From Asterias rubens (lineage: Eukaryota), in assembly GCF_902459465.1 (NCBI RefSeq), contig NC_047080.1, positions 11,222,001-11,286,000 of the forward strand: 64,000 nucleotides of DNA. Reading direction: 5' to 3'. The stretch's first letter is position 1, and each line of letters begins with the position of its first letter. The translations under genes were made by a program, and so were the position numbers. The notes beneath the pieces were generated by a model. It was not told the DNA's origin. It saw nothing but the letters and a program-made list of their open reading frames with translations, and searched no databases. Shown one piece after another: positions 7,722 through 62,049 of this stretch.

Positions 7722-7781
7722 ATGGGAGAGGAAGATTCAGGGCTGATGCTGAACCTGGATTACTCGGGGAAGCGAAATAAG
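7722..7781 (+). CDS. DDX31: DDX31 exon 1
   Basis: [20 protein letters not shown] resembles the Dbp7 N-terminus (MSDEDSMLLN); AAG|gtattt donor. Confidence 0.8.
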
Positions 7782-16700: not shown

Positions 16701-19700
16701 CTCCACCCTCCTGACTGTAAACCTCTCGTCCTCCGCACCAGCTGCAGGGAACCATCACTACCAGCCTATACGGAATGCACAGGAGGCAGCCGGTGCCCTG
16801 CAGCGGGTGTTTGAGGAGTTTGTGAATAATGATAAGGCTCACTCCGTGTTGGCCGTTAAAGGTGGGTAGTCCTCTTAATAGTGTTGCACAATACACTGAA
16901 TAAAACTCAGAGAGATTTTATCTGTTACATTATTAATTTATTGCTTAAAATAATTCAGCAATTTACATCAAATAATTCCCACGATTAATAAGGTCTCAAA
17001 CTTGAGGTCAGTATGACTAGTACACTAATTCAAAATCCAAACATTGATTCCAACTGGTTGACAAAATAAGAGTTTACACTCAGAATATTTACTAGTGTTT
17101 TTGAACTCCACTCAAGAAAGAAATAAAAGTTCAACAAAGGGACCTGAAACCTTCTAACATTTTATTAATAAACATCCTTGAAAATAAAAATACCCATAGC
17201 AAGTTGTTATGAATGTAAACTTAATCACTGCACCCAATGGACAGAAGACACAGAAGGAAGTTTCAGTTATTAAAATGATTTACTGTTTGTTTCTTCCATC
17301 AGCGTTCCAGTCTTTTGTCCGTGCCTACGCTACGTACCCAACGGCCTTTAAACACATCTTCCACACCAAGAAACTCCACCTCGGCCACACGGCCAAGAGC
17401 TTCGGGCTTAGAGAAGCGCCCTCACACATCACCGTTGGGCTAGTCAACCAGCAACCTGGAGGAAAACGAAAACCAAAAGGAAAAAGGTAAGAACGCTTTT
17501 TCAAACTTCTTTCAATCTCGCTCATTCTTCTTTGGAAGGACTGGTCGGAAAAGTTTCCAAAAGGGGCCAGCACTTTTTCATTCATTATCAATCAAAATAG
17601 TATCATATTTAATCAATTAAGATATTGTTTTTAGCGACAGCGAGTGAAAAGCGGTGGCTGGATACAGAAATTTTCCAAGTAGTCGGGTGTGGTTGTATGG
17701 TTTTGGACATTAAACTCCAGTTTTGAAGACTGAACCATTGGGGTGTGGGTTTAGAATCATGGTCCAAACTTCTTAGAGCTGGTTAAGCATAACAAGTATC
17801 TCAGCACAACAGAAGTATGCTTAGCAGAATAAGGTTACCAGCCAAAATACCATTTGACATGTACAGCCTGTGATTGGCATACTGCTTTTTTTTGCTTAGC
17901 ATTTTTTTATTATGTGTAAGCAGCTTTATGAAATTAGGCCCTGCAAAGCCTGTGAGGTTAAAATCTTGATAAGCACAACAAAAATCTTTCCTTACAGCTG
18001 ATGCCCACTCATTTTGCATCGCAGTATTCGCTGCTGAACAGTTTTATAACATTGGACCCTGGTAGTTTGTCTTTTGTCCTTGGGCAAGACACTTAACGGA
18101 AATTGTTTTAAGAAGAAGAGATGAATTATTTGGGAGTCGGTGAGAGTAAAAAGTTAACCTCGTTGCTGTGTTTAATGGAGGGTCCTTTGGCAATTACTCC
18201 TTCAAAATTAATGAGCATAAAAAGGTACTGAAAGAGCACTGGCGAGCTGTTGGTGTTATAAAACTTTGTAAGAAATAACCCCCTTTGAAGTAATGTAGTT
18301 TAAAGACACTGGACACTGTTGGTAATTACTCAAACTAATTGTGACCCGCTCCAACGAAATGAGGAATGTCTAGTAAAGTTTCATTTCGTGTAATTTGACA
18401 CCGAACATAATCATAACAAACAATTAATGAAAATTATTGAATTTTTTAATTTTTTTATTACTACACTTTTAGGTTGCCTAAATCTTGATTAAACTTACAA
18501 TGGTCTTACCTTTTCGTCAAAAGATTACTAAAGATGTAAAAACAGACGATTTCTGAGCCATGTTCTTGACGTAATTATCCAAAAATGTTCCAAATCCCAC
18601 GGGACAGACAGCGAACATTCATTGAAAACACCAAATTTGGCGAGCGTCGCAAAACTTTTCACACAACTTGCATAGCGCCACCAAGAGTACCATTGGAAAG
18701 CCAAAGATTAGAGGTGTCTAAATATAGCCACCAAAAACATGTGTCAACACTGAAAGGGGTTCAAAGGTCACCAAAGGCAAACCCTGTTTTATCAGCGATG
18801 ACATCTCCCATTCATAAATCCGCGTCGCGAGATTTAGTATGGCTCACAGACCGAGGCGTTGTTTATCCATGCAGCGTGAGAGTCCGATCACCCGACCCGG
18901 TCTTGTTGCCATAGCTAGTTGCAGCGCTGGTAATACGACAATGTACACACGAAGACTGCGCGGGTACCATGCACAAACTTTGCTACACGTACGACGTATG
19001 GAACAGTGGAATGTTTATCGAACGTTGGGAAAACAGTGTCTAATTTCCATCATTGTTTTGTGGTTTTTCAAGGTTGAATTGTTCCAAACCAAAATAATTC
19101 TGAATGTTAAAGGAATAATCTTTCAGTTAAACTTCATGCTGGGTAAGAAATTTCGCTAAAATCATGAGAAACATGCACGGGGAAATTGCGAATGTTCCCG
19201 GGTCTTCAAGCCGAGTATACCCGTGGGGATTGATGCTATGCGCTGAGTGACAGCTGTCTTTACAATGTTTTGACTTGACGGAACAAAACTCGCATTTCAA
19301 GTTGGAAATATCAACGCAAATTGCTCTAAAATTTCAGGTAAACATTGTCAAACTTATTGGTGAAATTGTCTACACATTATAATCTAACTTCTCGTTGAGT
19401 TGTTTGTTCATTTTGGTAATTTTGTTTGCCTGACTACGGGGGGTTAAAAATTGATGTTTTCATTATCGTAAACAAAAATATTAATATTATTTTAATGAGT
19501 GTGTGAGACGTCGCGTTTTTTCAAATTAATTTTTATGGAGTTTGTGTTTTCCAAAACGGGTCGTAAAATTAAGCGTCAAGGGCGTCGAAAATTCCACATT
19601 GGTTCAGACAGGAAGGTCGTATGATCTTGATTTTTATTTCATTTAAAATATTAAGATTTGCTTGTTTGGAATATTATGAAATATGCAAATGTGAAATTCA

Positions 19701-22700
19701 CTAGACATTCCTCATTTCGTTAGAGCGGGTCACAATTGTTAGCGTAAAAAAGTTACTTGGTAACGAGTAATGGAGAGCTGTTGATAGTATAAAACATTGT
19801 GAGAAACGGCTCCCTCTAAGATAACAAAGTTTTTGAGAACAAGATGTAATTTCTCACTCAAATATTTGAAGACTTCAGGATGAAGCCCTTATTAGGCATC
19901 TGAAAGCACACACATTTGTGCAACAAGGGTGTTTTCTTTCATTATTCTCTCGAACTTCTACGACCAATTGAGTCAAAATGTTCACAGGTTTGTTATTAGG
20001 GTGGCATGGTTTGCGTGTGCGTAAAGCGCTCGCCTCTCACCAAGGTGACCCCGGTTCGATTCCCAGCCGGGGCCATATGTGAGTTGAGTTGTGCGTTGTT
20101 TGCTCTGCTGTGCACGAGGGTTTTTCAGACCATCCGATTTTCCTCCCTCAGGAAAAATCAAACACTTACGATCTTGGCTGTGCTCCGTGGTCATAATGGG
20201 TTGATGTGTCTGGTAGCCAGAGGCGCCCTTGCATGCCTGCTTCTCGAACACGTTGTAGCCGTGTCCTTCACAATTCAGCTCTTAGCTGCGAGTAAGGATG
20301 ATTACCCCCCCAAATTATTATTATAATTATTATTTTATGCATGTGTTCGGATACTGGTTTTTGACAATTACCAAAGTTTATCCTACCTTTAACTTTGATA
20401 ATGGTCTTTGTTAACCTTGAACTTGTAAAAAAGTTGTTTTATTTATCTACATTATCGGGCCGAGCCCATCTGACGTTGGCTGCAACTGCCACATCTCTTT
20501 CTTTGCTTACCTGGCCTAATGCTCGTTAGTCAACTCATGCATGTCGCTAATTAGGTAACGAGTCATTTAGCTGTATAAGACTATTGAGGGTAGAATGACA
20601 TTAGCCTCCCCCTTCTTTGTTATAACTAAGCTCATCATCACCATTCTCTGTGTGTCTACTGTGGTGTCACTTAGAACCCAAGGTTCTCCAACATGATGTG
20701 CACATGATGTGCATAGTGTACATCGTTTTGTTGTTTTTGTATATTTTTTATGAGAGATCGCCTAACGTCACAAGGCCACGGACGGCCACTTTAAGGCAAG
20801 GGCTACACTTAAGTGACTTGGGTTATCGGCCCAAATCAACTGCCACCAGGGGCGATGTTGCCACCTACTCCTTGGGCTGAAACAGGGTTAACCCCTTCAC
20901 AGTCTGTAAGGATGTAGGCATGGGTATCATCCACTAGGAGCCACCTACTCCTGTGCTGAAACAGGGTTAACCCCTTCACAGTCTGTACGGATGTAGGCAT
21001 GGGTGTCATCCACTAGAAGCCACCTACTCCTGGGGCTGAAACAGGGTTACCCCCTTCACAGTCTGTAAGGATGTAGGCATGGGTATCATCCACTAGGAGC
21101 CACCTACTCCTGGGGCTGAAACAGGGTTAACACCTTCACAGTCTGTACGGATGTAGGGATGCCATTACAACATTCGAAATGCGACCTCGGTTCTCAAAAC
21201 GTAGACCTCTTGTATGTAGCCTGCCACTGCGATTAAACGGTAGAAACACGCAAGTGTGCGTAAATGCCACATGCAACGCTCAGCCAGTGATAGGTCTTCT
21301 TCAGATCCCAGTGAGGGCGCTGTCTTAACTTCTAACATACGCAAGAGGCCCGTTCAACACCAATGCTTTACTAAAACTTTAGTTTTACCGCAAAGGACAA
21401 ACTTTTTCAAAATAAACCCAGGGCCAATCACAATGGTGCAATAAAAAGCATTTAACCTTGAGAGCTTCTTTTAACTTTGTATATTTTTAAACTGTTTTTT
21501 AATAATGTATTTATTGCTGGTGGACAAACGAGCATGCCATGTAAACATTATCGGTCTTAGTGCTTACTTAATTGAGACATAAAAAGTGCAAAAACCTTTG
21601 TTTTCCCATGTTGTCTGATGGGAATATAGAGTGTGCGCACTATTTCAAGAAAAATGCTTAGCTAGTTTCCTATTGTGGCTCAGTCACACCAATGAAACTT
21701 CTTGATATTTTGGGCATAAAAACCCATATCCGCTTACTAAGTTTTCTTTCCAAGCTCAGCATTTCATTTAAACACTTGCTGGATGGCTTATCGAGATATG
21801 GCCATCATGTCTAGCAAAACAAACAGTCACTTTTAGAAACTATCAAATTAGGTTTTGTTTGTTAGCATTGCTGGAACCACCTCAGGCATAAGGTTACATA
21901 CAATTGCTGCAAAAGACAGCAAAGGCAGTTGTCTGTATTTTCAATAGAGGGCAGTATACAGCTTGACCATTAAGTGGCTTGCAATGAGAGTTCAGTTGTT
22001 AATTAAGCAACAAAAGATAACTCTTGTGAATGTAGCTTGGGTTGAAACTGGTCGTTAATACAATATATTTTTTACTACTTCTAATCTTTGTGATCATTAA
22101 AAAGCATTTGGTCTTTTTCAAACTGCTTAGACATTTTGGACCTCCCCACTTGATTTACCAAGGTTCGAACAATCACTTTCTTACAATTTGCTAGGAAGGT
22201 AAATGGCCTGACGTTTCGACCCTTGCCAAGCCTCCAAAGGCTTACAGCTTGCTGACCCCAATTCATAATATTGAACAATTTTCTAAATAATGTTTACTTC
22301 TGAGCAATCAATTATTAAGAAAACTGTCTTTTAAATTGTTTTGTTTCTGTAAAAACAAGTTCACATCCCACAAGGCTTGTTTGCAACGGGAGGAAAACAA
22401 CTTGAACTGGTCAATCGACCTCAAACGCAGGTCATCCTTTCGACCCAGCAATACAAATTAGAGGGCAGTTGCCTTGAAATGCACAACTCTGTAATCATTC
22501 ACTAAAAAAAAAAAAAAAAAAAAAAGACTTACACAAAAAGTCTTTTATAGAGTCTTTTTATCTAGTCATGTAATTCCGTAGCAGTAAATATTTGAACAAC
22601 CCACTTGGTTAATTCGCCCTGGCAATTTCCCTCATGAATTTTTCATACCTGTACTCGTTGGATATTTTGTTTATTATCTGGAAATTAAGGGATTATAAAG

Positions 22701-31700: not shown

Positions 31701-32170
31701 CGCTGTTTACCATTCTAGTCGCAATGCGTTGCACACTAAGTATTGCGATTTTCAGAGTTTGCTCATAAACGAGTACAAAACTGGTGCAGTTAAACATATT
31801 CCACGGCAACCGTGTTCGCTCAGGCGGTAAATCCATAAGTTCACAAAATAGTTATTATTAGCAACAAGAAAAATTAGAAACCTTGGGAAAGGGATTGCTT
31901 TCAATTCAGACATCCGTCTGCAATTAGCTTAAAAGCAAAATATTATGACGATTAGCGCCTTCAATATGTGATGTGGTTGTAATAAATTGTCAGTCGAAGG
32001 CCGCGTGCGATCACTTAACTTCTCATTTACGAGCTGCGGAGTTGTGATTAGAAAATGTCACAGTTGTAGGTTTGTTAAAGTGATCGGGAATGAAGGATGT
32101 TTCTACTCACTGTACAAATTAGGATTGTTGTTGTTGTCCGACTCTAAAGAATTTAAAGTTTTTTTTCTTC

Positions 32171-32204
<34 letters not shown>

Positions 32205-50200: not shown

Positions 50201-53200
50201 AAATTAGCGCAACTTCACAGAAGATTGTTCTGGCCCTTGCTGAGTTATCGTTGGAAACATTAGCTTTTCAAGATGCAGTGGTGCCCCGATGACTCTGCAA
50301 GAGTTTTGGAGGTGAAAGGTTCGAATCCTGCCTAGAGGGTTATGCTGTGTCAATGACACCTTCTGCCCAGTTATCCCTCCCCATTATCATCCATACCACC
50401 CTAATCAGGGTATACTCCCACCCCAATCAATTCCTCTTCCTCTATGAGGGTATCCAAAATCCCCAATCGAGGGAAGCCAACGGATGTCAATTACACCTGC
50501 TGCCCAATTATTTCCTCCCGCTTTCATCCATACCACCCTAATCAGGGTATACTCCTACCCCAATCAATCTATCTACCCTAATGCAGGTATCCAAAGTCCC
50601 CAATCGGGGAAGCCAACGGATGTCAATGACACCTTCTACCCAATTATTCCGTCCTGTAACTCTCCCAAACCCATTAACAAGAAGACAAATCAATTAAGAA
50701 GTATCGCCAGAGGATGGCGTCTCTGTGACCCAGACGCTATCGTCACCATCTCATCCCCCTTCGCTTCTTTTCTGTCTTCCCATCTTCCCTCCGACCATCC
50801 ACTCCTCGAAGACGAGAAGAAAATAAAGAAGCTATGCAGATTGAATCCGACGTAGCATAAAATGAATTCGTGCGAGGTATCATCATCAGCGAGGCTGTAG
50901 CCCCCCTTCGCTGGCCTGTGTCCATTAACCTCCCTCGACTGCGACACGAAAGTGAGCATTAGAGACGACTTGTGTGATCATTAAGAAAAATGTGTTGTCA
51001 TTACGCTGTGATTAATTGTAATTGTCTGTCCTACAAGGGGCTCTAACCTAAGCACAACATCATCTAGCCCTGCTATTTCCCCCCCCCCCCCCCCCCCTCC
51101 ATTCACAAGTTAGCCTTGCTTCGTAGTTGCCGAGATGCAAAGAAAGAAAGTGACAATTTTTTAGGCATTGCATGGTGAGGTAATGTTTGGTTTGCAATTA
51201 CACCACGTGATTGTATTTATAATTGGTATTGGTTATTAATATTCCATTTATGACTACATCTCAAAACTTGGTGTTCAGCTGTTACCCGATGTTTCTTGAA
51301 TTATTATGGAATTTTATACACAAAATGTTAAAAGCTTCCCATATGACAAGCTTGCCTGCCAGGAAGGTCCTGGAATGTACAAGGACCCGCTTTTAGTAAA
51401 CAAAGGTTGCATGGTCTATAATGTTAAAGGAACATTACAGAATTGGTTTTGCTAACAAAACCGTTGCTGGCACTTTATGTAATCCACCATATACACCAAC
51501 TAACAAACCTGTAGAAGTTTGATACCAATTGGCAATGTGGGTCGCGAGAAAATCGATACACATTCTGCATTGCATTGATGCCAAAACAAAAAAGAATAAA
51601 ACGCTCACTGAGCAATAAACTCCAAACACGAAATTGGATTATTTATTTCTCATCAAATATGACATCTCAGACAGAAATATTTCAAGGGATGTTTTCTACT
51701 ATCATCATCATTAGACCGTGTAGAAGTGTTCAATTCTACATACAGAAAATATTTAACAAAATGAAGAGAACAATTCTAACCGTATAAATGCAAGCATGTA
51801 AGACCCCGTGCGCAATCGTCATACGAAACATGTAAGTCACACACAGCATTTTGGGAATCAACACATTAGCATGAAAAGGTGTTTGCTACAGATGTCCTGT
51901 TTGATGCAGCGATACATACATGTAGTTGTACATGTAGCCCGACTCACTATTGGATTGTGTTTGAATTAACGGCTTATGCAGTGGCTACGTCTATACAAAA
52001 GAACTATTCCTCAATGTTGCAGCCATTCTCAGTAGCCAAAGTCACTTCGTTTGGATGCTACCTAAGCATGCACTCCACCACTCACAACACTTGCATATTT
52101 CCAGCCCCGCGTTTCTCTCCAGAGGTTTGTGGCTTGTAACAAAGACTAGCTGTATCATCATCTGGACCCTACAGCAGAGCGTGATCAGATAAGCTATCCA
52201 CCCATACACCGGATGACAAAGGGGACTTGTTAATATTCCATTAATGGGGGCCCCACGTCTCTATCCAACCTTCTGCATCAATCAGAATCAGATTCTCACA
52301 GTTTCCTCGTTGCCGTTCTGGAACAGGAATTGGGCGAGAGCACTAGGAGGCCTGTAAAAGATTCATTGCAGAAAAGCTGAAAAAAGCACAAGTAGATCTC
52401 TCAAAATATTTCAGAAAGAGCACCATCTATTCCTCTCCTCAGGAATCTCCTTCATTTTATTTTTGATATAACTCCTTAATGTTGGCTTCTTATTTACGAT
52501 CTTATTTGGGTGAATTAGGGTCATTATTTCTATTTAAAAGTTTCAAAGGCGTACATGGATGTGAATATGGCATATTCTATCTTGGCCTGTTTAATTACAC
52601 TTCCTTATCATTTTGCTATAGAAGCGCCGCCCTGTACCCCAAGTGTTCTTTAAAGACACTGGACACTATTGGAAATTGTCAAAGACCAATTACCTATCAT
52701 ATGGACACATTAATTGTTTGTTCATTTTTGCAACTAGCGACCCCACAAAAGGCAGGTCAAAATAGCACCTTCAAGAGGCCTCTTTCCCATTCTGAAAACT
52801 GTGTGGTCGTGCAATCTTTATTTTTGGTTTTACAACTATTTCTCTGATGGGTTTTAAACCAAGCACGAGCAACCGGCCTTTGCTTGACAGAGTGTACCCT
52901 CTTCACGACAAATTTGCATCGAAAACAGAAAACATAGTCGTTGACAAAGACCCTTTGATGATGCTGTCGTAATCCTGCGATAAACTAACAAACATTCAAC
53001 CAGGGACCACACTTTGCGTCAAGATTTCCACTATCTGTTTGCATCTCTCTTGAATTTCATTCATTAAAATTCATACCTAATTAAACCGTAATCGGTATTT
53101 GTTGTTCATACAAACTCGATCAAACTGCACGCTGGTGGGTTCCTCCCTTGGTACGGTGTCTTAAGATGCTGAAATTGTATTTTGAAAGCCTTTTAACATC

Positions 53201-56200
53201 AAACTAACTGGCTCCTTGTACTCTCTTTAGTCTCTGAGAACCTGTTCCTAATCGGGCGATATCTCTCTAGAAATCAGTTGAGGTGTAACTGCACTTTTTC
53301 CAGAGCGATTGCTAAGTAGGGTTTTTCTTTTCTTCTGATGGCGATCGTAGTAAACTGATCGAAAGCGTTCCGCTTTTTTTTCCTTTACTTTTTTTTTACA
53401 ATACTGCTACGCATTAGAACCAGTACAATTCATTTAAGAGATTTTGTTTTTAATTTTGTGACTGCAAAGTATTTGAAATATTGCTGTATGTCAACTAGTC
53501 ATGTTAGCACGGGACTGGTGTTTCTGATCAGCAGAGTATGGGTTGGAGTCCTGGTCGTGGCACTTGTGTCCTTAAGCTAGATACTTTACCTTGAATGATT
53601 TGTCCTTCAGATGTGACATTAAACTGTAGGTCCCAGGTACTAGGAGTGGTAGTACACATAAAATAACACCCTGCAAGAGACTTGTTTACAGGTTTCCTCA
53701 GACCTGCAAGGCATTCTTAAGGTCATTACCAGAAATATATAGTACTTGTTGCTACAAAAGTACATACAGATACATAATACCAGTTAGTCATTAAAGGCAG
53801 TGGACACTATTGGTAATTGTCAAAGACTAGCCTTCACAGTTGGTGTATCTCAACATATGCATAAAATAACAAACCTGTGAAAATTTGAGCTCAATCGGTC
53901 ATCGAAGTTGCGAGACAATAATGAAAGGAAAAAACACCCATGTCACACGAAGTTGTGTACGTTTAGATGGTTGATTTCGAGACCTCAAGTTTAAAACTTG
54001 AGGTCTTGAAATCAAATTCGTGAAAAATTACTTCTTTCTCGAAAACTATGGCACTTCAGAGGGAGCAGTTTCTCACAATGTTTTATACCATCAACCTCTC
54101 CCCATTACTCGTCACTAAGAAAGGTTTTATGCTAATAATTATTTTGAGTAATTACCAAGAGTGTCAACTACCTTTAAAGTGCAACATTTTATTTTCCTCC
54201 CTGAAATATCTAATGAAAATAATTACCATAGGTTAATCTTACCATCCATAGAAATATTATTTGGACTTATCGATGGCAACACGTATAATTACCTGTTCTA
54301 TGCCCTGTAATACTTCTTGTTTGTGTGTGCGTCGGAGGGGGGGGGGGAGGTGAATAGTAGCCCATAACTGCGTTAGCAGCAAGATCAGATAAAAACGATT
54401 GTCGTGCATTGGTGACAAATGAGGCTTGTTAGTATGCCATTAACCGGGTTGCCCTGAATCATCCAGCTGCTCACTGCGCAGCGACTCATACCCCCTCAAA
54501 CTCCCCCGCTCTCCGATGACGACGCTTTCCCCTTCTTGGGGAGCAGAGGATCACCAGAATAGTTTCATTTTGATTCCATTTGTGATTAGACGTCGAGGAT
54601 GAGTTTGGGTGGCATTACCGTTGAAGGGCTGTTGTACTTTTAGCCCGGGCCCACGAGGGCGCTTCCCCATCAAAGACCCCCCCCCCCCCCTCACTCTCAG
54701 GCCCAGAGCCAGTTAATAATGTTGCAATCTTGTGAGATAACGATCGGTGGCACGTACACGTTTTTTAAGCCAGCGGGTGCTTGCTGGTCTTTGAAGAGTC
54801 TGTACTCCTCCTACATGGTGAATCATTTTTAGTTTGGAATTTATCAACCGAAAAAAAAGGTGGTATCTATACAGTTTTTATTGAGTCAATTTTGTATTCT
54901 TTTGGGTGGAAGTTGGCAATCACCAGGAACTTACTGTAAGAAGACCACATGGAATTGGGGCCAAAGAGAACATAGGCGGAAAGGGAACCATTTTTTTTTT
55001 TTTTTTTAAGAGAATAATAGCAAAATATATTTTCAATTTAATTCAAAATTAATGTTTAGGCCTATTTCCATACTTCATGACAATTTGTTTCAAATTTTTG
55101 TTTCTGGTCGGAAGCGAAAGGTCTGCATGTGAAAGAGTTAAAGGGACTGTGCTTAGTTCCCCCCCCCCCTCTCTCTCTGTGAACACATGTACTGTTTACA
55201 ATGTATACCATTGCCATTCTTGTGTGGTACCCAGACTGCCTGCAAAGACTAAGTTTTAAGAACAAGTTAAAGGCACCAGTCTCTTGTGAACACAGCCTCA
55301 GCTTGAATCCTTTACAGAATAGTGTATTCCGAAATCAACATGTCCAGCGATAACAAAATAAGGTTTATGATTCCGCAAAAAGTTGGACGTACTCTCCCCT
55401 CATCCTTTGATTATGTAATCCCCCTCCCATCATCCAAACTAAAAACAACAATTTCATCTGACTTTTAAAAAGAAATTCTCTCCGCAGACTTAAATTTCGT
55501 AAGCGTACTTCCTCAGTCTAATGTACTACTCTTGGAATCTCTGGTGAGGTATTCGTTCAGCCATACTTCCCCCTTCATCAAAAGGGAGTCCCAATTATTT
55601 GTCGTTGATCAAGTTCACATCTGTCGCCCCCATTAGGGAAGATTTCTTGTAAGGGCATAGGATATTGATACGGGTGGGTGATTGTGGGGTGGGGGGGGGG
55701 GGGTGGGGGGAGGTCATTCAGCATCACTATTCAATTGTAGTCCAATAGTTTTTGAGGAATTAGAAACACATTTGGTGATGAATTATTCACGAGGACAAGT
55801 GTGTTCACTTTAGCCGCTAAGCAGAAGTGGATTTGCTAAGCACAATTGAATTGAGAAGGGAGCCCTAGTTCTTCAAGCAACATTCAGTATTCTGTTCTGC
55901 AGAATTTATGAAGTCAGGTTGCTGCTTTAACATTTTGTTGAACACATTAATGATACTATTAAACCCTGTTAAAGATTCCAGTGAAAATGTTGAATATATC
56001 ATTAAACCTATTTTTACAAATATTATAAAACTATTAAACCCAGTAAAAGACACTGCTTAATCTGTTAAAAATACTATTAAACCTGTTGTTTATTGGTCAA
56101 ATTTTGCTGAAAGTCACATGATAAATGCTGTGACCCGAACTTTATCCCACTCTTGTCAGACATCAAAGTAAATTTTAAATCAACAACTTTTCAAGAGCTG

Positions 56201-58497
56201 TTAAGAAACTTGAAGACTACTTTTAAGAAAGTCCAGCCCAGAGGTTTGGTCATAAAGCTACACCTCATCTCATTTCACCCTTGAGTTGAGCTAAGATTGC
56301 CCAAAACAATCCCCTCTCAAGTATTTTCCAGATTTGACATTAAAAAGAAAAGTGATTCCCTATTTTCAGCGTAGGAAAGAAAGACAAAAAAAAAACATCA
56401 CTTCATCCCTCTAATAGAAAAAAAGAAAGAAAACATTTTAGAGAAAATTGAAAAATAAAAAACAAGCCCAGATTCTTTCTACCCCTCGTTTGGCGCACAT
56501 CTGTCGTCCCCCATTAGCACAGCGCACGAAATGCTAAGGCTTATTTTAGAGGAAGTATGAACTTCTCAAGTACTGGTGTCTACGGTGAGATTAGCCCATT
56601 ATATCATTTGATTCGTGCGACAGCATGTGTACTCAAAGCATAAAAGTCAATCTGTGGCCTAGGGCCATATTGCACTACTACACTCAAGCTCGACGGCCAC
56701 TCGTGGTCTTGCAAATAGCGTCTAGAGAAACCACAACTGACGGAAACAGAAGAATGATTTGAGGGGAAAAAATTTATCAGCAGAAAACATCGGTGTTGTT
56801 CTGTCACAGACATTGTTTCATTCAAGAGGTTTGGATATACTCTGAGCAATTACTCAATCTTACGTGGTTCTCAGTGGGGACCAGTCCGTTACCAATTCAT
56901 CCCCTCTCTCTCTCCGTCGCTCTCCCTCACCTTCTAACCTCCCTCTTCTTGTCTCCATCGCAACAAAAGAAATCTTGTGGATTCTGTATCTTGTCTGTGA
57001 TATATATTTGTGTGTTTGTACATATATTCAGGCCTGTATGCTTCAATTTTCAAAGGGCAAGGGCACCAAAGCATTTTCTCCTTGGTAAAGGGCACCCTAT
57101 GAACAATTTGTTTATATCTACTGGAGCATTACATTGGCACCAAGGCAATGACAAGGGGCATGGAGGCAATTGCCTTCGTGGCCTCCATGAAGTATCAGCC
57201 TGTATATTTAGATGTTTTTTCTATATATCGCTATTAAACGTGTTGTGATTGCGTTCTTTTATGGAGGTGTCTTGTGTAGGATCGGGTGACGAAAGTCAGT
57301 TGCCATTTTTCTGAGAGCGGTGCGGACAATTAAAGCTCCCACGGGGGTGCAGCGAGGGGGCCATTCAAACGTGGCAGCCATGGGGAATGAGAAAAACCTT
57401 TTAGAGGATTCGTATTGGACCTCCTGTTAAGGGTAGAGTCATTGTGAGCTCGGCAAAAGCTCATATGTTCCAGATGATTTGACCCTGTTGGCCAATGCAT
57501 GTTTAATTGCGGCAGCTACTTAGACCCCACTCTACTACGCCGCTCTCTACTTATAAACCTCTCCAATCAAGTATTGGATTTTTATTATCATTTTTTCAAT
57601 CCCCTCTTTCGGATTTCTTACAAGATAATGACAATCTAATGTTTGATAGTTTAGTTGATGGAGGGTTTTTTCCCTCCTGGTTTATTGAAGGAATTCTGGA
57701 GGTTTGGTCATAGGTGGCACAATCGTTGAAAACAGATGATTATTTATTTGGCCATTTCGATGGTGTAAAACACTTTAGTCAATATGAGAATGGTAGCCAA
57801 AGGCTGCCAGTCTTTATGAGTTGTTTCTAAATTAAAAGTGATGTTTTATACATACTCTTTTCCTTCCACTCTGTGCCTTTGATTATTGTATGTAAGGGGC
57901 GCAATATAAATTTTAAATAATATTATTATTATTATTATTATAATATAGAAAGGTAATGACTATCTCTAATGAGTTTTTATTTTATTTTTGTCTTTCCTCC
58001 AGAGTTGAAACCAACGGTTCTTTTCAGAACCACCCCAACTCATTAGAGATAGTCGTTACATGGTGTTAACGCAAACCTTTCTATATCGTATTTCCACCAT
58101 GCAAAGTTTCAAATCCTAATTATTATTATTATTACTTAAATTTTGGGTCATTTGTTTTGTTGCAGTCAATAAGAAATGCTGTCATTATTGAGGGTATACC
58201 ACAACAAAACCAAATTCAAAACCGTTACAAACTTCTTTTGTTGCAAATGTTAGCTCCAGTTAAAATTGTGTTCAGCTCTGCCTTTTTTCTTTCTTTCTGT
58301 TTATATTCATTTCTTCACTCATCTTTCCAAAATGCAGGACACACGAGGGCCGGTTACCGAGCGTTAAACAGCAGATTCTGGCGGAGTACTCCAGCGGTCT
58401 TGATGGGAGCTCAGGGAAGATGGCCAAACGCCCAAAGCTGTCACTGTCTAAGAGGAAAACCACACCCAAAAGACGATTGAAGGGGCGTCGACTATAA
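7722..58497 (+). CDS. DDX31: DDX31/Dbp7 DEAD-box RNA helicase, complete spliced CDS (16 exons, 728 aa): join 7722-7781, 9498-9784, 10125-10200, 10535-10649, 10771-10880, 11243-11284, 11509-11693, 12707-12813, 13327-13598, 14237-14383, 15315-15374, 15512-15562, 15997-16136, 16671-16861, 17303-17486, 58338-58497
   Basis: All junctions are GT-AG and phase-consistent (2187 nt). General helicase motifs: Q motif, [39 protein letters not shown]31-specific strings: [72 protein letters not shown]. Confidence 0.95.
8057..8155. mobile_element. About 100-bp foldback element (Mutator-like)
   Basis: Near-perfect arms ctactaaaagccgacaactcgccgacaacgccg / cggcgttgtcggcgagttgtcggcttttagtag; CACGATCACGG on both flanks. 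Confidence 0.75.
8642..9101. mobile_element. 460-bp MITE with 9-10 bp TSD (Mutator-like)
   Basis: TIR GGTCCTACTACTTGCCGTCAACTCGCCG with subterminal GCCGTCAACT repeats; GAAGTATGG on both flanks. Confidence 0.85.
9181..9427. mobile_element. GGCCCAATTTCAT-family MITE
   Basis: TIR GGCCCAATTTCATGGCTCTGCTTAC / GTAAGCAGAGCCATGAAATTGGGCC, CWG flanks. Confidence 0.85.
9498..9784 (+). CDS. DDX31: DDX31 exon 2
   Basis: Low-complexity N-terminal region ending [17 protein letters not shown]; AT|gtgagt donor; exact acceptor (gtccag|AGG) less certain. Confidence 0.8.
10125..10200 (+). CDS. DDX31: DDX31 exon 3
   Basis: [25 protein letters not shown]; cacag|G, CTG|gtaagt. Confidence 0.93.
10211..10396. mobile_element. 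Degenerate GGCCCAATTTCAT-family MITE
   Basis: gaaccaatttcatttagctgcttagc..gttaagctgagtttggcc; starts 10 nt after the exon 3 donor. Confidence 0.6.
10535..10649 (+). CDS. DDX31: DDX31 exon 4 (Q motif, motif I)
   Basis: [38 protein letters not shown]; tttcag|A, G|gtaagt. Confidence 0.96.
10771..10880 (+). CDS. DDX31: DDX31 exon 5
   Basis: [26 protein letters not shown]; ttgcag|G, GAG|gtatgt. Confidence 0.96.
11243..11284 (+). CDS. DDX31: DDX31 exon 6
   Basis: [14 protein letters not shown]; long polypyrimidine tract, AAG|gtacgt. Confidence 0.93.
11509..11693 (+). CDS. DDX31: DDX31 exon 7 (GG, TPGR, DEAD)
   Basis: [48 protein letters not shown]. Confidence 0.97.
11758..12135 (+). mobile_element. 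Family A MITE
   Basis: TTAA|AGGCAGTGGACAC..caattaccaatagtgtccagtgtct. Confidence 0.88.
12190..12572 (-). mobile_element. tRNA-derived SINE with extended 3' tail
   Basis: 12307-12572 is near-identical to 5101-5380; the extra tail is inferred. Confidence 0.8.
12707..12813 (+). CDS. DDX31: DDX31 exon 8 (SAT)
   Basis: [35 protein letters not shown]. Confidence 0.96.
13327..13598 (+). CDS. DDX31: DDX31 exon 9
   Basis: [42 protein letters not shown]. Confidence 0.95.
14237..14383 (+). CDS. DDX31: DDX31 exon 10
   Basis: [34 protein letters not shown]. Confidence 0.95.
14560..14850 (-). mobile_element. Degenerate SINE (second tail type)
   Basis: Shares the head (gcttaaggacacaagtgtcac..atcaaacaccag) with the SINE family; tail related to 15620-15870. 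Confidence 0.65.
14930..15241. mobile_element. 312-bp foldback MITE with long TIRs
   Basis: Arms from tcttggttcaagac..tcctggatttgt to ggagagtcttggcacattcgttaaat mirrored on the right; GCTATCA subterminal repeats. Confidence 0.88.
15315..15374 (+). CDS. DDX31: DDX31 exon 11
   Basis: [20 protein letters not shown]. Confidence 0.95.
15512..15562 (+). CDS. DDX31: DDX31 exon 12 (motif V)
   Basis: [17 protein letters not shown]. Confidence 0.96.
15620..15870 (+). mobile_element. Degenerate SINE (second tail type)
   Basis: gtaaatggatacctg and gctgtatactccccagg shared in opposite orientation with 14560-14850. Confidence 0.6.
15997..16136 (+). CDS. DDX31: DDX31 exon 13 (motif VI)
   Basis: [46 protein letters not shown]. 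Confidence 0.97.
16671..16861 (+). CDS. DDX31: DDX31 exon 14
   Basis: [31 protein letters not shown]; phases match. Confidence 0.92.
17303..17486 (+). CDS. DDX31: DDX31 exon 15 (C-terminal extension)
   Basis: [33 protein letters not shown]; AG|gtaaga donor, phase 2. Confidence 0.95.
17761..18058. mobile_element. GGCCCAATTTCAT-family MITE(s), degenerate or compound
   Basis: ggtccaaacttcttagagctg..tatgaaattaggcc..ttataacattggacc|ctg. Confidence 0.65.
18341..19733. mobile_element. 1393-bp non-autonomous DNA transposon with AATT TSD (Sola1-like)
   Basis: TIR GTGACCCGCTC(C/T)AACGAAATGAGGAATGTCTAGT; AATT at 18337-18340 and 19734-19737; no transposase ORF. Confidence 0.88.
19998..20329 (+). mobile_element. 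tRNA-derived SINE with (TTA)n tail
   Basis: B box GGTTCGATTCCC 20053-20064, central tatgtgagttgag..gagggtttttc..ttttcctccc block, TTATT duplication. Confidence 0.85.
20860..21157. repeat. Minisatellite, about 3.7 copies of 79-80 bp
   Basis: Units start at 20860, 20940, 21019, 21099 (gccacctactcc..ccactagga). Confidence 0.95.
22206..22241 (-). ncRNA. Decayed minimal hammerhead ribozyme (Penelope-associated type)
   Basis: Minus strand GCCU..GGGUC-GAAACGUC-AGGC: stem I intact, 5' core partly deleted; sister of 29227-29261. Confidence 0.45.
23285..23500 (+). mobile_element. SINE fragment with V-domain-like core
   Basis: gtgggttttccttggg..ggtttttcctcccaca resembles the V-SINE central domain (recalled). 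Confidence 0.45.
24117..24423 (-). mobile_element. Penelope-like short repeat ending in a hammerhead fragment
   Basis: Dispersed family (also 1050, 23150, 27030, 49690, 51165, 58001); terminal ctcaacgtttcgactagcttgctcta. Confidence 0.6.
24688..24840. mobile_element. TAGGAC/GTCCTA-repeat palindromic MITE (partial)
   Basis: Same family as 46078-46226. Confidence 0.7.
25003..25223. mobile_element. GGCCCAATTTCAT-family MITE with CTG TSD
   Basis: CTG|GGCCC..GGGCC|CTG. Confidence 0.85.
27106..27145 (-). ncRNA. Minimal hammerhead-like motif (non-canonical A at position 4)
   Basis: Minus strand CUC-CAGAAGA-C-GAUCAG-aggaua-CUGAUU-GAAACGUC-GAG. Confidence 0.5.
28586..28762 (+). mobile_element. CAGGCCTG-family MITE (about 180 bp)
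   Basis: caggcctg..gaaagggcaagggcaccaaggcattttctc..caggcctg; further fragments at 27200-27360 and 28340-28560. Confidence 0.85.
29227..29261 (-). ncRNA. Minimal hammerhead core with U3:A8 covariation
   Basis: Minus strand UUGAGAA-A-GACUC-uacuu-GGGUC-GAAACGUC-AGGC; 5' strand of stem I lost. Confidence 0.55.
29338..29508 (+). mobile_element. CAGGCCTG-family MITE, second subfamily
   Basis: Related to the split copy at 39428-39500 plus 39880-39945. Confidence 0.7.
29932..30423. repeat. Old degenerate tandem triplication (110-170 bp units)
   Basis: ggggtgattag(a/t)agcgagg and aaagac(a/g)at(g/a)c(c/t)gtattgt recur at about 29932, 30145 and 30260. Confidence 0.7.
30777..31047 (+). mobile_element. 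CAGGCCTG-family MITE with 6-bp TSD and a nested insertion
   Basis: AGCCAG at 30771-30776 and 31048-31053. Confidence 0.8.
30874..31012. mobile_element. 139-bp palindromic element nested in the CAGGCCTG MITE
   Basis: GGAGACTTTC / GAAAGTCTCC and GGCAGCAGACTTACCGG / CCGGTAAGTCTGCTGCC arms. Confidence 0.8.
32540..32696 (+). mobile_element. CAGGCCTG-family MITE with 6-bp TSD
   Basis: CTGACC at 32534-32539 and 32697-32702. Confidence 0.8.
32776..33166. repeat. Old tandem duplication (about 225-bp period)
   Basis: aacaccaagtagaaaac(g/a)ttcc(g/a)aagaccttgtt..tgcagagcatttt..tttgattgca at 32776 and 33001. Confidence 0.8.
35792..36345. mobile_element. Cluster of GGCCCAATTTCAT-family MITE pieces
   Basis: gggcccaaattcatagagc..ctatgaatgttggtccctg and gtaagcagagccaagaaacttggccctg. 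Confidence 0.65.
36045..36225 (+). mobile_element. CAGGCCTG-family MITE with 6-bp TSD
   Basis: TACTAG at 36039-36044 and 36226-36231. Confidence 0.88.
38642..38759 (-). mobile_element. CAGGCCTG-family MITE, internally deleted, reverse orientation
   Basis: ..ggtgcccttgccctttcaaaaacgaagcatacaggcctg. Confidence 0.8.
39506..39875 (+). mobile_element. Family A MITE inserted into a CAGGCCTG-family element
   Basis: Full TIRs, TTAA both sides; flanks join into the 29338-type consensus. Confidence 0.9.
42320..42470 (+). mobile_element. Family A MITE 5' fragment
   Basis: ttaaaggctcttgacactattggtaattactc..ctccctctgaagtaac. Confidence 0.75.
45139..45490. repeat. Minisatellite, about 11 copies of 29 bp
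   Basis: Unit ctagtgtagtgtctttggct(c/a)a(t/c)aagcca. Confidence 0.95.
46078..46226. mobile_element. TAGGAC/GTCCTA palindromic MITE with CAG TSD (Harbinger-like)
   Basis: CAG|GGGTCGATTTCACAAAGAGTT..AACTCTTTGTGGAATCCACCC|CAG. Confidence 0.85.
46340..46415 (-). mobile_element. tRNA-derived SINE head
   Basis: Minus strand TAGCTCAGTTGGTAGAGC A box and GGTTCAAATC B box; acceptor stem not formed. Confidence 0.65.
46613..46885. repeat. Minisatellite, 13 copies of 21 bp
   Basis: Unit agggcac(c/t)acag(c/t)(g/a)aaagtac; stop-free in several frames. Confidence 0.95.
48075..48318. repeat. Minisatellite, 4 copies of 61 bp, nearly identical
   Basis: Units start at 48075, 48136, 48197, 48258. Confidence 0.95.
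49100..49410. repeat. Degenerate triplication (about 110 bp)
   Basis: agtaacac..ggtccagtg..tttgg..aaagg three times. Confidence 0.7.
49750..49787 (-). ncRNA. Minimal hammerhead-like motif, sister of 27106-27145
   Basis: Minus strand CAGAAGA-C-GAGCAG-aguaua-CUGUUU-GAAACGUC. Confidence 0.4.
50349..50655. repeat. Tandem repeat, about 2.2 copies of 136-137 bp
   Basis: gtcaat(g/t)acacc at 50349, 50486, 50622. Confidence 0.9.
53510..53665 (+). mobile_element. tRNA-derived SINE fragment
   Basis: ctggtgtttctgatcagcagagt..cacttgtgtccttaagc. Confidence 0.75.
53795..54173 (-). mobile_element. Family A MITE, reverse orientation
   Basis: TTAA both sides; interior is the reverse complement of the consensus. 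Confidence 0.9.
57029..57202 (+). mobile_element. CAGGCCTG-family MITE with 6-bp TSD
   Basis: TATATT at 57023-57028 and 57203-57208. Confidence 0.88.
58338..58497 (+). CDS. DDX31: DDX31 terminal coding exon 16
   Basis: Long pyrimidine tract then tgcag|G; phase 2 continues in frame as (R)[52 protein letters not shown], matching the human ILRSEYSSGME motif (recalled) plus a basic tail. Missed by the ORF track because it has no upstream start codon. Confidence 0.88.
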
Positions 58498-60097: not shown

Positions 60098-62049
60098 TTA
60101 TAAGCAATATCATCATATTTTGTTATCAACACTTTTGTCATTTTCGTATTTCCCAATCAACACCTCAGTGTGCACTTATTCTGCCCCCTCCCCATTCTAT
60201 CTACGCACCCCCAATTCTCATTGACCCGCCCACACCCCCAAATCACCCAACCCTTTCTAGCACAATTGTAACTTCGTCTCCATGACATCCCATTATGCAC
60301 AAGTGACAAATATTTTCGTACAAAAATGTTACAAGTTTAACCGCGTCAAGACAGTCTTCACTTTTGCTGTATCTGTCTTTGAGTGTCCCCACCGGTCACA
60401 ATAAAAAAAAGGACTCAACGGCCAATAATTCACAATCAAAATCATCCTGTGCCTACAGCGAAACAATCTTCCTCGCTCATTGCCCTGAGACCAGTAGCAC
60501 TTTATTTTCCATTTGCGACTTTGTTTTAGTAAGTGTCAAAAAGCCGTCGGGCGGGTTTTCATTTTCATTCCAAGAAGAGTCTCCGTAAAAGTGGATACTT
60601 ATTAAAAGTATTGTCTAGTGATTGTGTTGTTCTGAAATGGAGACAGAATACAAAAAGAAACTTCCTAGAAAAATATTATTAGGTGGATTGTGTAGCCTTA
60701 TCACACAAGAGTTAACCACACGCAGGGAGAATGTGATTAAATCATACACGTAACAGCCGTCGTATCGATGGTTTTTGGCGGGAAGCGAATTCTTGCCGGG
60801 CGGATTTTATGGCGCGCTTCTGTCGTGCGAGTCACAAGTAGTTTGTGGTGAACGCTGGCTGCGCGCCTGGGGGGCTACAGGAAGAAGAATCGGCCCAGTG
60901 GGGGGCAAGAGAAATGGGTTTTTAATGGAGGGAAAGTTTGCCCTTGTTCATCGTCTCCCCAACCGCGGGCAATCTCCATCTCTCTCTCCGGCCTCTTCTT
61001 CTCATCCACGGTCCAAAAATACAAATACATCCCGGACAAAATGAAAAGAAGAAAAACATGGTTCGTTAATGGCTCCTTGAAGAGATATTTTCGCACGTCA
61101 GTTGTGTTTAGTTTTTTTTTTTAGCTTCAATAACCCTTACCATGACAGTGTACATTACTAATCCGGTATTAGCACCCAAAATGTCCCTTCCGTGGAAAAC
61201 CCCCCACCGCCTTTAGAAAAAAAAGCTTTCAAAATGACGCAAGGAAGAAGAACAAGGCAAATAACTAGAGGTTGTAGTGTGGTTGATCACAGCACCGCGC
61301 GATTTGCCCACCGCCTTAAGATGGGCATTTTGTGCTTTTGTTGAGGACAGCCCGATTTTTGTGGTTCGACTTTTAGTTTTTTTTTTTAATCCGTTTAAAT
61401 TCCCTGCTAAGGTTTTTTTCTCCTCCTACTTCTTCTCTTCTTAAAATTCATCCTCTTTTCTTGGCTTGGTTCACCGTCTCAAACCTGAGGTGCGGATCAA
61501 GCTCAACCAGCGATGCAACCCGTGAAAAGGTTGGACTGGCATTGTTAAAAAAAAAGTGTATCAAATTACCTCATTGCTTGGGCCCCATTGCAACCCTGTC
61601 AGTCTTAAATTGCCTTTTTTGATCATCTACACTTAATGGTGATGGCGTACTTTGTGGAGTATCAACCTTTATGTGTAATCAAAAAGAGTTCGAAACATCT
61701 AGACAAACTATGGGGTTACTTGTTATTTATTTTTTATATTTTTTATATGCAACTTAAATGTTTTCTGGTTAGGGTCGATGTTTTTACACACTAGAATGTG
61801 TGTGTTTCTTGCTTCTTCCTTTTTCTTGAAAATTGCGGGTGGATAAAAAAAATATATATAAATTGAGTTTTTGTTTTAAAAAAATACATGTATTATGAAC
61901 AAACTAAACAGAAGAAAATGACAGTTACCCACTGGCCAAGATCGACATCGTGTTTTACTAAAATTTACAAAGTCTAAAGATATTATTTACCAAGATAGGA
62001 AAAGCTATTGGAAACTTATATATTGGAGACATTTGATCTTAAAGACCTG

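What the first reader, a model, noticed from the sequence alone, without database searches (positions are those of the whole stretch)
17487..58337. 40.9-kb last intron of DDX31: candidate ancient genomic regulatory block with DDX31 as bystander of an unseen BarH-like gene
Seen: the other 14 DDX31 introns are 121-1716 bp. The last is 40,851 bp and separates the helicase body from a 52-codon tail exon (AEYSSG). It contains no recognisable gene, but has several TE-poor, CpG-richer islands dense in developmental TF sites. Established: housekeeping genes whose introns host enhancers of a neighbouring developmental regulator define genomic regulatory blocks, and human DDX31 ends tail-to-tail with BARHL1. 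From recall, to be verified: the Drosophila orthologue CG8611 lies near B-H1/B-H2. Inference: this intron is a BarH/Barhl enhancer landscape, and a BarH homeobox gene lies shortly beyond 64000, probably on the minus strand.
Basis: partly seen in the sequence, partly recalled or inferred. Interest (0 to 1): 0.85.

Follow-up and report, generated by a model that had tools for sequence, protein, structure and literature searches.

The report
Conserved-element-rich last intron of starfish DDX31
The 40.9-kb last intron of the starfish DDX31 helicase gene is real and carries a string of non-coding elements conserved between distant starfish, which looks like a regulatory landscape for a neighbouring gene, but the proposed BarH target gene was not found within reach.

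Summary
The window is Asterias rubens LR699110.1:11,222,001-11,286,000. Splicing 16 GT-AG exons from the window reproduces the NCBI DDX31 protein (728 aa). The first 14 introns are 121-1716 bp and the last is 40,851 bp.

The tail exon carries the DDX31 C-terminal motif found across animals. mRNA contigs use the 17486 donor and continue about 400 nt with sequence that is not in the next 2.7 kb.

- The intron holds 10 colinear blocks (2.75 kb) conserved with the orthologous 35-kb intron of Acanthaster. They are repeat-free and non-coding. The first two are also present in Patiria. The other 14 introns have none.
- An oversized last intron recurs in sea urchin (20.9 kb), acorn worm (12.1 kb), amphioxus (14.2 kb) and a bird (9.5 kb), but not in Lingula (0.57 kb).
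- In the bird, a BARHL1-type homeobox gene lies tail-to-tail 5.6 kb beyond DDX31.

No homeobox exon lies in the window or 4.5 kb beyond it. None lies within 10 kb (7.6 kb in Lingula, where the contig ends) downstream of DDX31 in five other invertebrates. So "shortly beyond 64000" fails, and the BarH target stays untested. The first "island" (18.5-20 kb) is a transposon.

Verdict: a genomic-regulatory-block-like bystander intron, a new member of a known kind.

The parts
7722..58497 (+). DDX31 coding span: 16 exons, 728 codons plus stop
   Evidence: Exact reconstruction of NCBI protein P0275 from the window exons. Pfam DEAD, Helicase_C and CTE_SPB4 on the annotated product.
17303..17486 (+). Exon 15, the last exon of the helicase body (CTE_SPB4 region). 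The donor is GTAAGA at 17487.
   Evidence: mRNA contigs end their match at 17486/7 and continue elsewhere.
17487..58337 (+). Last intron, 40,851 bp, GT..AG
   Evidence: No annotated nested gene. At least 16% is in repeats that recur within the locus.
58338..58497 (+). Tail exon coding part: [23 protein letters not shown]... followed by a basic tail, stop TAA at 58495-58497.
   Evidence: It is 60% identical to the Acanthaster tail, E 9e-12.
26666..26771 (.). Conserved non-coding block 1 (Asterias, Acanthaster, Patiria)
29679..29951 (.). Conserved non-coding block 2 (Asterias, Acanthaster, Patiria). It contains a repeated ATAATGGCAT..AAATATT motif.
   Evidence: E 6e-31 against Acanthaster, 1e-40 against Patiria. 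All six reading frames carry stops.
36873..37502 (.). Conserved non-coding block 3
   Evidence: 643-bp alignment, 64%, E 5e-49. Repeat-free.
41207..42104 (.). Conserved non-coding block 4, the largest. It is CpG-rich and has long runs of near-identity broken by indels that are not multiples of three.
   Evidence: 981-bp alignment, 68.6%, E 8e-124. No preferred reading frame. The A. rubens RNA runs that hold DDX31 mRNA are not among the holders of this block, while DNA runs of a sister species hold 61-66% of its words.
43416..43527 (.). Conserved non-coding block 5
44019..44180 (.). Conserved non-coding block 6
44280..44487 (.). Conserved non-coding block 7
47430..47654 (.). Conserved non-coding block 8
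48975..49056 (.). Conserved non-coding block 9
56496..56551 (.). Conserved non-coding block 10 (weakest, E 3e-4)
60483..60535 (.). 53-bp element 2 kb downstream of DDX31, 96% identical between Asterias and Acanthaster, at the edge of a CpG-rich stretch. It shows that the conserved array runs past the 3' end of the gene.
   Evidence: No stable fold (z 0.85) and no Rfam family.
18341..19737 (.). Transposon-like insert with about 35-bp terminal inverted repeats, sitting inside a SINE-like repeat.
   Evidence: Inverted ends read. Contigs of other repeat copies skip 18334-19753. There is no match for it in Acanthaster.

Best explanation
The window holds the Asterias rubens DDX31 gene, a nucleolar DEAD-box helicase. 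Its final intron (17487-58337) separates the helicase body from a 52-codon conserved tail exon.

That intron, and at least the first few kb beyond the gene, carries an array of conserved non-coding elements. These are most likely long-range cis-regulatory elements (enhancers or silencers) of a developmentally regulated gene lying on the 3' side of DDX31. DDX31 would be a bystander, locked to that gene because the elements sit in its intron. This is a genomic-regulatory-block arrangement.

Shown:
- the intron itself;
- the conserved array, and that it is non-coding and repeat-free;
- its restriction to the last intron and the 3' flank;
- the recurrence of an oversized last intron in five deuterostome lineages;
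- the BARHL1 gene at the 3' end of DDX31 in vertebrates.

Inferred:
- that the elements are enhancers;
- that they serve a neighbour rather than DDX31;
- that the neighbour lies downstream.

The target is not identified. BarH is the leading candidate only by analogy with vertebrates (about 0.3).
For: - Gene model: exact reconstruction of the annotated protein, spliced mRNA contigs, and a tail motif conserved across animals.
- Conserved array: 10 colinear same-strand blocks totalling 2,752 bp against Acanthaster. The same search against the reversed subject gives 0 hits, against 32 real ones. The other 14 introns (about 7.7 kb) have no colinear non-exonic block.
- Patiria shares blocks 1 and 2, in the same order, within the only 10 kb of its intron that I could fetch.
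- The blocks are non-coding. tblastx scores are similar in all frames, with stops in each, and indels are not multiples of three.
- The blocks do not overlap repeats within the locus.
- Four of the intronic windows with CpG observed/expected of about 1 lie on blocks, in a gene body whose median is 0.62. This fits germline-unmethylated regulatory DNA.
- The 1-kb block is not held by the RNA runs that hold DDX31 mRNA.
- The array continues downstream of the gene, at 60483-60535 (96% identity) and at window-equivalent 64094-64180.
- Last-intron sizes: Asterias 40.9 kb, Acanthaster 35.3 kb, Lytechinus 20.9 kb, Ptychodera 12.1 kb, Branchiostoma 14.2 kb, tinamou 9.5 kb (its largest intron). Most other introns are below 2.5 kb.
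- Vertebrate DDX31/BARHL1 tail-to-tail adjacency (with 109), and the published BARHL1/DDX31 super-enhancer (PMC4911170, PMC12209359).
Against: - No developmental regulator gene was found. There is no homeobox within window-equivalent -2.3 to 68.5 kb, and none within 10 kb downstream of DDX31 in four other invertebrates or in the 7.6 kb left of the Lingula contig.
- Conservation was shown only within starfish. The blocks are not detectable in the sea urchin, acorn worm, Lingula, amphioxus or bird loci above control level.
- There are no chromatin, contact or reporter data.
- TAAT-core enrichment is marginal.
- Lingula has a 0.57-kb last intron, so the feature is not bilaterian-wide.
- The comparison rests on one full orthologous intron (Acanthaster) plus a 10-kb piece (Patiria).
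Confidence: 0.6

Rival explanations
1. The array is the BarH/Barhl enhancer landscape, conserved since the deuterostome (or bilaterian) ancestor, and a BarH gene lies just downstream of the window on the minus strand.
For: - The vertebrate arrangement is verified: a homeodomain gene tail-to-tail 5.6 kb from DDX31 in a tinamou, adjacent locus tags in two teleosts, and the human BARHL1/DDX31 super-enhancer (PMC4911170).
- The conserved blocks are skewed to the 3' part of DDX31 and run past its end.
- An enlarged last intron is shared by ambulacrarians, amphioxus and a bird.
Against: - There is no BarH exon or W[FY]QNRR signature up to window-equivalent 68,497, and no annotated gene in the 10 kb after the stop.
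- The same is true in Acanthaster, Lytechinus, Ptychodera and Branchiostoma.
- Lingula has a short last intron and no homeobox neighbour in the 7.6 kb left of its contig.
- I could not retrieve an echinoderm BarH protein, so its chromosome is unknown.
- The Drosophila linkage is unverified.
Confidence: 0.3
2. The conserved blocks serve DDX31 itself. They could be intronic splicing or recursive-splicing signals needed to remove a 41-kb intron, regulators of alternative 3' ends, or enhancers of DDX31 transcription.
For: - They lie inside DDX31.
- Amphioxus uses an alternative terminal exon inside the homologous intron (isoform X1).
- Acanthaster has a 679-aa isoform X3, shorter than the 728-aa isoform X1.
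Against: - Blocks of 0.3-0.9 kb with dense near-identity are far larger than splicing signals.
- Conserved elements also lie outside the gene, downstream.
- A housekeeping helicase is not expected to need an array of distal elements. That expectation is established knowledge of regulatory blocks, not something tested here.
Confidence: 0.1
3. The blocks are exons or promoters of an unannotated nested transcript (a long non-coding RNA or small-RNA host) inside the intron.
For: - The 41.2-42.1k block is CpG-rich, like a promoter.
- Some metatranscriptomic or RNA-labelled runs hold 9-14% of its words.
Against: - The A. rubens runs that contain DDX31 mRNA are not among the holders of this block.
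- No Rfam family is found in the intron apart from a repeat-borne histone stem-loop look-alike.
- There is no conserved reading frame and no annotated gene.
Confidence: 0.1
4. The long intron is neutral bloat from transposon accumulation, and the apparent conservation is incidental, for example shared old repeats or a locally slow mutation rate.
For: - At least 16% of the intron is repeats recurring within 70 kb, plus five tandem arrays.
- One 'island' is a transposon.
Against: - The blocks are single-copy, colinear and on the same strand in two or three species.
- The rest of the intron and all other introns do not align at all, and the reversed control gives nothing.
- The size excess of this particular intron recurs in lineages with unrelated repeat content.
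Confidence: 0.05

Closest known systems
Genomic regulatory blocks (GRBs): arrays of conserved non-coding elements around a developmental target gene, with unrelated bystander genes holding elements in their introns (Kikuta 2007 and Engstrom 2007 from recall; Irimia 2012, PMC3514665; Synorth, PMC2745767)
   Same: - A housekeeping gene has one hugely expanded intron.
- It holds a colinear array of conserved, non-coding, repeat-free elements confined to that intron and the adjacent flank.
- The size excess is kept over long evolutionary distances.
   Different: - The target gene has not been seen.
- Conservation is shown only between starfish orders, not across phyla.
- There is no functional or chromatin evidence.
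Vertebrate BARHL1/DDX31 locus (BARHL1 GRB; the BARHL1/DDX31 super-enhancer hijacked by GFI1B in medulloblastoma, PMC4911170, PMC12209359; BARHL1/2 GRBs in PMC2831330, PMC2745767)
   Same: - It involves the same bystander gene.
- The last intron, at the same position before a tail exon of about 52 codons, is the largest intron in the tinamou (9.5 kb).
- Regulatory DNA is attributed to the 3' part of DDX31.
   Different: - In vertebrates the homeobox gene lies 5.6 kb from the DDX31 stop. In the starfish nothing lies within 10 kb.
- No sequence similarity was found between the starfish blocks and the bird locus.
DDX31 / yeast Dbp7 family of nucleolar DEAD-box helicases
   Same: - The window gene is the annotated A. 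rubens DDX31.
- It has DEAD, Helicase_C and CTE_SPB4 domains and the conserved C-terminal SE[YF]SSG motif with a basic tail.
   Different: Nothing unusual in the protein. The interest is in the gene's architecture.

Membership tests
Genomic regulatory block | Cluster of conserved non-coding elements spanning the region | tested here: met
   10 colinear blocks (2,752 bp) in the last intron, and 2 more downstream, against Acanthaster. Two are shared with Patiria. The reversed control gives 0 hits. The blocks are non-coding and repeat-free. This holds only at within-Asteroidea depth.
Genomic regulatory block | A developmental regulator (target gene) inside or next to the element cluster | tested here: inconclusive
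   There is no transcription-factor gene in the 70.8 kb available. Sequence beyond window-equivalent 68,497 could not be fetched. The only gene called in the flanks is the upstream Myb-domain protein.
Genomic regulatory block | Bystander gene of unrelated, broadly expressed function, with elements in its introns | tested here: met
   DDX31 is a DEAD-box helicase whose mRNA is present in all four public runs laid. All intronic blocks lie in its last intron. That it is a housekeeping gene comes from knowledge of the family, not from a test here.
Genomic regulatory block | Synteny between bystander and target kept over long evolutionary distance | tested here: inconclusive
   DDX31/BARHL1 adjacency is seen in a tinamou and two teleosts. 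No homeobox lies within 10 kb of the DDX31 3' end in 2 starfish, a sea urchin, an acorn worm or amphioxus, or within the 7.6 kb left of the Lingula contig. Larger distances were not testable.
Genomic regulatory block | Elements act as long-range enhancers and contact the target promoter | not testable with these tools
   This needs ATAC-seq or H3K27ac, Hi-C or 4C, and reporter assays.
DDX31/Dbp7 DEAD-box helicase | DEAD and Helicase_C core plus the CTE_SPB4 C-terminal extension, and orthology to named DDX31 proteins | tested here: met
   Pfam families on the annotated product. The spliced window CDS equals NCBI 'probable ATP-dependent RNA helicase DDX31 [Asterias rubens]'. The best relatives are all named DDX31.
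Histone 3' UTR stem-loop (Rfam RF00032) | Stem-loop just downstream of a replication-dependent histone coding sequence | tested here: not met
   The hit at 58011-58056 scores 35.8 bits against a gathering score of 34. There is no histone ORF upstream. The hit is part of a 93-bp repeat with a second, inverted copy at 27016-27108.

The most novel reading that the evidence does not exclude
The oversized last intron of DDX31 is the invertebrate counterpart of the vertebrate BARHL1/DDX31 enhancer region. On this reading, BarH enhancers have sat in this one intron since the deuterostome ancestor. That would keep the intron large and keep DDX31 linked to BarH for more than 500 million years, and in starfish the BarH gene would lie some tens to hundreds of kb downstream of the window.
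Probability: 0.3. Interest if true: 0.7.

Novelty: new member of a known kind. Interest (0 to 1): 0.5.

Why it matters
If the blocks are enhancers of a neighbouring developmental gene, this is a clean invertebrate example of a bystander gene shaped by another gene's regulatory DNA. One intron out of fifteen is kept 10 to 100 times larger than the rest in starfish, sea urchin, acorn worm, amphioxus and bird.

It offers about a dozen short, well-delimited candidate enhancers. They can be tested in Patiria or Asterias embryos.

If the target proves to be BarH, the human BARHL1/DDX31 super-enhancer region known from medulloblastoma enhancer hijacking would have a deep evolutionary origin.

It also explains an annotation slip. 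The Patiria DDX31 model lacks the tail exon, probably because the intron is so long.

Tried and rejected
1. Nested genes. Pfam on ten intronic ORFs of 106-151 aa gave nothing, there are no tRNAs, and the only Rfam hit is a repeat-borne histone stem-loop look-alike.

2. A second DDX31-like piece at 63131-63268 (tblastn E 0.014). It contains a stop and has weak similarity, so I treat it as chance.

3. The contigs that all start at 18510 first looked like an exon of a nested gene. Reading the sequence shows a transposon with inverted ends inside a SINE-like repeat. The common start is a repeat boundary in the assembly graph.

4. Deep conservation of the blocks. nhmmer and sensitive blastn against the sea urchin, acorn worm, Lingula, amphioxus and bird loci gave nothing above the reversed control.

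5. The 53-bp 96% element as a small RNA. It has no stable fold and no Rfam family.

6. Finding BarH in A. rubens.
- The scan's own notes hold no BarH entry.
- The W[FY]QN[RK]R regex and tblastn with tinamou and amphioxus BarH found nothing in any invertebrate locus.
- The last protein search used a profile made of a carrier sequence plus the tinamou homeodomain exon. It returned mainly vertebrate BARHL proteins, many unnamed fragments, one Branchiostoma belcheri BarH and no named echinoderm.

7. A first DDX31 profile search was swamped by vertebrates. A second, built on sparsely sampled lineages plus the window exons, found the echinoderm proteins.

8. Identity of the upstream Myb-domain gene (is it TTF1-like?). 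The Atlas and PDB searches say only 'Myb-like'.

9. Literature on DDX31 with microsynteny or synteny, CG8611 with B-H1, and Barhl with sea urchin gave nothing relevant. Supplements of the two microsynteny papers are not held. Engstrom 2007 is not held.
Full report
**Where the window comes from.** The window is identical over all 64,000 bases to Asterias rubens (common starfish) GCA_902459465.3, record LR699110.1, positions 11,222,001-11,286,000. The fetched locus L003 adds 2,279 bases upstream and 4,497 downstream. Window coordinate equals L003 coordinate minus 2,279.

**Checking the observation.**
- A search with the last helicase-body exon found DDX31 relatives. A profile search built on sparsely sampled lineages plus the window's own exons then found the annotated A. 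rubens DDX31 protein P0275, 728 aa.
- P0275 matches the window exons, including residues 615-676 at 17302-17487 and 676-728 at 58336-58494.
- A script that joins exons at GT-AG sites reproduces P0275 exactly from 16 exons. The introns are 1716, 340, 334, 121, 362, 224, 1013, 513, 638, 931, 137, 434, 534, 441 and 40,851 bp.
- The tail exon is the only place in six frames of the window with the motif [SADT][ED][YF][SAGD]SG. That motif, followed by a basic tail, ends DDX31 in vertebrates, lamprey, tunicate, echinoderms, hemichordates, amphioxus, brachiopod, nemerteans and annelids. The Asterias and Acanthaster tails align at 60% identity, E 9e-12.
- Logan contigs of four public runs, laid on 14200-20199, show spliced mRNA joining exons 10-15. 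Contigs of 2,510, 2,532 and 280 nt run on for 394, 415 and 97 nt past 17486/7 without matching anything in 17488-20199. The runs hold 0.60 of the words of 17200-17486, and the exon makes up 0.64 of that stretch.
- This shows that the donor is used and that the next exon is more than 2.7 kb away. That the next exon is 58338 rests on the exact protein match and on homology. The single read-laying run could not span the intron.

**What is in the intron.**
- No gene is annotated inside it. Ten ORFs of 106-151 aa have no Pfam hit, and there are no tRNAs.
- At least 16% is made of repeats that recur within the 70-kb locus, including a roughly 390-bp SINE-like family with about ten copies in the window. 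There are also five tandem arrays.
Contigs from other copies of the repeat skip exactly this insert.
- The one Rfam hit, a histone 3' stem-loop at 58011-58056, has no histone ORF upstream. It belongs to a 93-bp repeat with an inverted copy at 27016-27108.

**Conserved non-coding elements.**
- I fetched the orthologous loci of Acanthaster planci (L008, whole gene) and Patiria miniata (L004; its model lacks the tail exon, so only 10 kb of the intron is held). These are distant relatives of Asterias: they belong to a different order (Valvatida against Forcipulatida, from my own knowledge).
- Sensitive blastn of the Asterias locus against Acanthaster gives 32 hits, and none against the reversed subject.
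- Besides the exons and a few non-colinear repeat hits, there are ten colinear, same-strand blocks in the last intron: 26666-26771, 29679-29951, 36873-37502, 41207-42104, 43416-43527, 44019-44180, 44280-44487, 47430-47654, 48975-49056 and 56496-56551. Together they make 2,752 bp, or 6.7% of the intron.
- Two more lie downstream of the gene: 60483-60535 (96% identity over 53 bp) and window-equivalent 64094-64180.
- The other 14 introns have no such block.
- Blocks 1 and 2 are also found in Patiria, in the same order.
- The blocks are not coding. tblastx gives similar scores in all six frames, with stops in each, and the alignments show indels of 1, 2, 4, 5 and 9 bases between runs of near-identity.
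- They do not overlap repeats.
- Four of the intronic windows with CpG observed/expected near 1 sit on blocks, against a window-wide median of 0.62.
- The largest block is not held by the A. rubens RNA runs that hold DDX31 mRNA. DNA runs of a sister species hold 61-66% of its 31-mers.
- The blocks are not detectable in sea urchin, acorn worm, Lingula, amphioxus or bird above control.
- TAAT-core density in them is only slightly above the rest of the intron. I do not lean on motif content.

**The same intron in other animals.** The intron between the CTE exon and the roughly 52-codon tail exon measures:

| Species | Last intron | Other introns |
|---|---|---|
| Asterias | 40.9 kb | 121-1716 bp |
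| Acanthaster | 35.3 kb | 1.7 kb or less |
| Lytechinus | 20.9 kb | mostly 0.8-2 kb |
| Ptychodera | 12.1 kb | 2.5 kb or less |
| Branchiostoma lanceolatum | 14.2 kb | one other of 14.1 kb, one of 2.4 kb, the rest 0.2-0.7 kb |
| Tinamou | 9.5 kb | none larger |
| Lingula | 0.57 kb | 0.18-1.0 kb |

In Patiria the tail exon is not within 10 kb. In Amphiura the gene spans 215 kb. The excess is thus shared by the deuterostomes sampled, but not by the one spiralian sampled.

**The BarH question.**
- In the tinamou, a 322-aa homeodomain gene lies on the opposite strand 5.6 kb past the DDX31 stop, and its exon reads as a BARHL1 homeodomain.
- In two teleosts, DDX31 and the BARHL1-type gene carry consecutive locus tags.
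- Papers describe a BARHL1/DDX31 super-enhancer in human and BARHL1/2 regulatory blocks in vertebrates.
- In the starfish, however, there is no W[FY]QN[RK]R signature and no tblastn match to tinamou or amphioxus BarH anywhere in L003. No gene is annotated in the 10 kb after the DDX31 stop.
- The same holds for Acanthaster, Lytechinus, Ptychodera, Branchiostoma and, over the 7.6 kb left of its contig, Lingula.
- I could not fetch sequence further out. My last protein search did not bring up an echinoderm BarH. Where BarH lies in A. rubens therefore remains open.

**Reading.**
- The best-supported explanation is a regulatory-block-type arrangement. The last intron and the 3' flank hold long-range regulatory elements of a gene on the 3' side, and DDX31 is the bystander. 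I put this at 0.6.
- The skew of the blocks to the 3' end, their continuation past the gene, and the vertebrate precedent make BarH the leading candidate. That step is analogy only, and I put it at about 0.3.
- Rivals are elements serving DDX31 splicing or 3'-end choice (0.1), an unannotated transcript (0.1) and neutral bloat (0.05).
- Compared with known regulatory blocks, the element cluster and the bystander are shown. The target, the deep synteny in invertebrates and the function are not.
- This is a new member of a known kind. The intron itself is already annotated. The conserved array, and the recurrence of the oversized last intron across deuterostomes, are what is worth following up.

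Noticed in passing
window 60483-60535 (and L008 62562-62614): A 53-bp element 2 kb downstream of DDX31 is 96% identical between Asterias and Acanthaster, far above the exons (75-83%). It ends in ...TTTTA|GTAAGTG, which looks like a splice donor, is preceded by a CCAAT-like GGCCAATAA, and lies at the edge of a CpG-rich stretch (60.5-61.25 kb). It could be a non-coding first exon or promoter of an unannotated downstream gene, or an ultraconserved enhancer core.
   Followed up: partly
window 58011-58056 and 27016-27108: An Rfam histone 3' stem-loop hit above the gathering score, with no histone gene upstream. It is part of a 93-bp repeat with a second, inverted copy in the same intron. A dispersed repeat in this genome seems to carry a histone-type stem-loop.
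   Followed up: partly
window 18341-19737: A 1.4-kb CpG-rich element with about 35-bp terminal inverted repeats, inserted in a SINE-like repeat. RNA-labelled runs hold it at depths similar to DDX31 mRNA. One 2,708-nt contig joins it to 1,713 nt from elsewhere, probably a longer copy of the element.
   Followed up: partly
window 1164-1534, 1663-2051, 3995-4378, 11754-12138, 19698-19997, 39500-39886, 42364-42474, 53789-54179, 59738-60108, 62598-62972: A roughly 390-bp SINE-like repeat family with about ten copies (60-90% alike) in 64 kb, on both strands. Word depths in public runs are very high.
   Followed up: no
L003 1-8171 (window up to about 5892), L004 1-7359, L008 4550-8117: The upstream neighbour of DDX31, on the same strand, is a Myb-domain protein in all three starfish. 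From memory, human TTF1 (a Myb-type protein) lies near BARHL1/DDX31 on 9q34. Whether the starfish gene is its orthologue could not be settled.
   Followed up: partly
L004 (Patiria miniata JADOBP010000030.1): The annotated Patiria DDX31 (668 aa) stops at the end of the helicase body and lacks the conserved tail. The tail exon is not within 10 kb downstream, so the model is probably truncated because of the long last intron.
   Followed up: partly
L010 39281-39412 (Branchiostoma lanceolatum): Amphioxus isoform X1 ends in an alternative terminal exon inside the homologous last intron and lacks the SEFSSG tail. Isoform X2 uses the conserved tail exon at 46407-46457.
   Followed up: no
L007 11382-13353 and 13731-15668 (Lingula anatina): The exons for DDX31 residues 152-302 occur twice in tandem in the Lingula scaffold, and an 862-aa protein version contains the duplication. 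This is either an assembly artefact or a real internal duplication.
   Followed up: no
window 20860-21161, 45138-45470, 46613-46877, 48075-48319, 50348-50654: Five tandem arrays in the intron, with periods of 80, 29, 21, 61 and 137 bp. The 21-bp array is open in several frames on both strands, which explains the overlapping ORFs at 46.5-46.9 kb.
   Followed up: no
one search run table: DNA runs of a sister species hold 61-66% of the 31-mers of the 41.15-42.16 kb block. RNA runs of that species held only 8-20% of the words of the exon-15 stretch, of which the exon makes up 64%. This hints that the block may be more constrained than the coding exon. The comparison is confounded by RNA coverage.
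   Followed up: no
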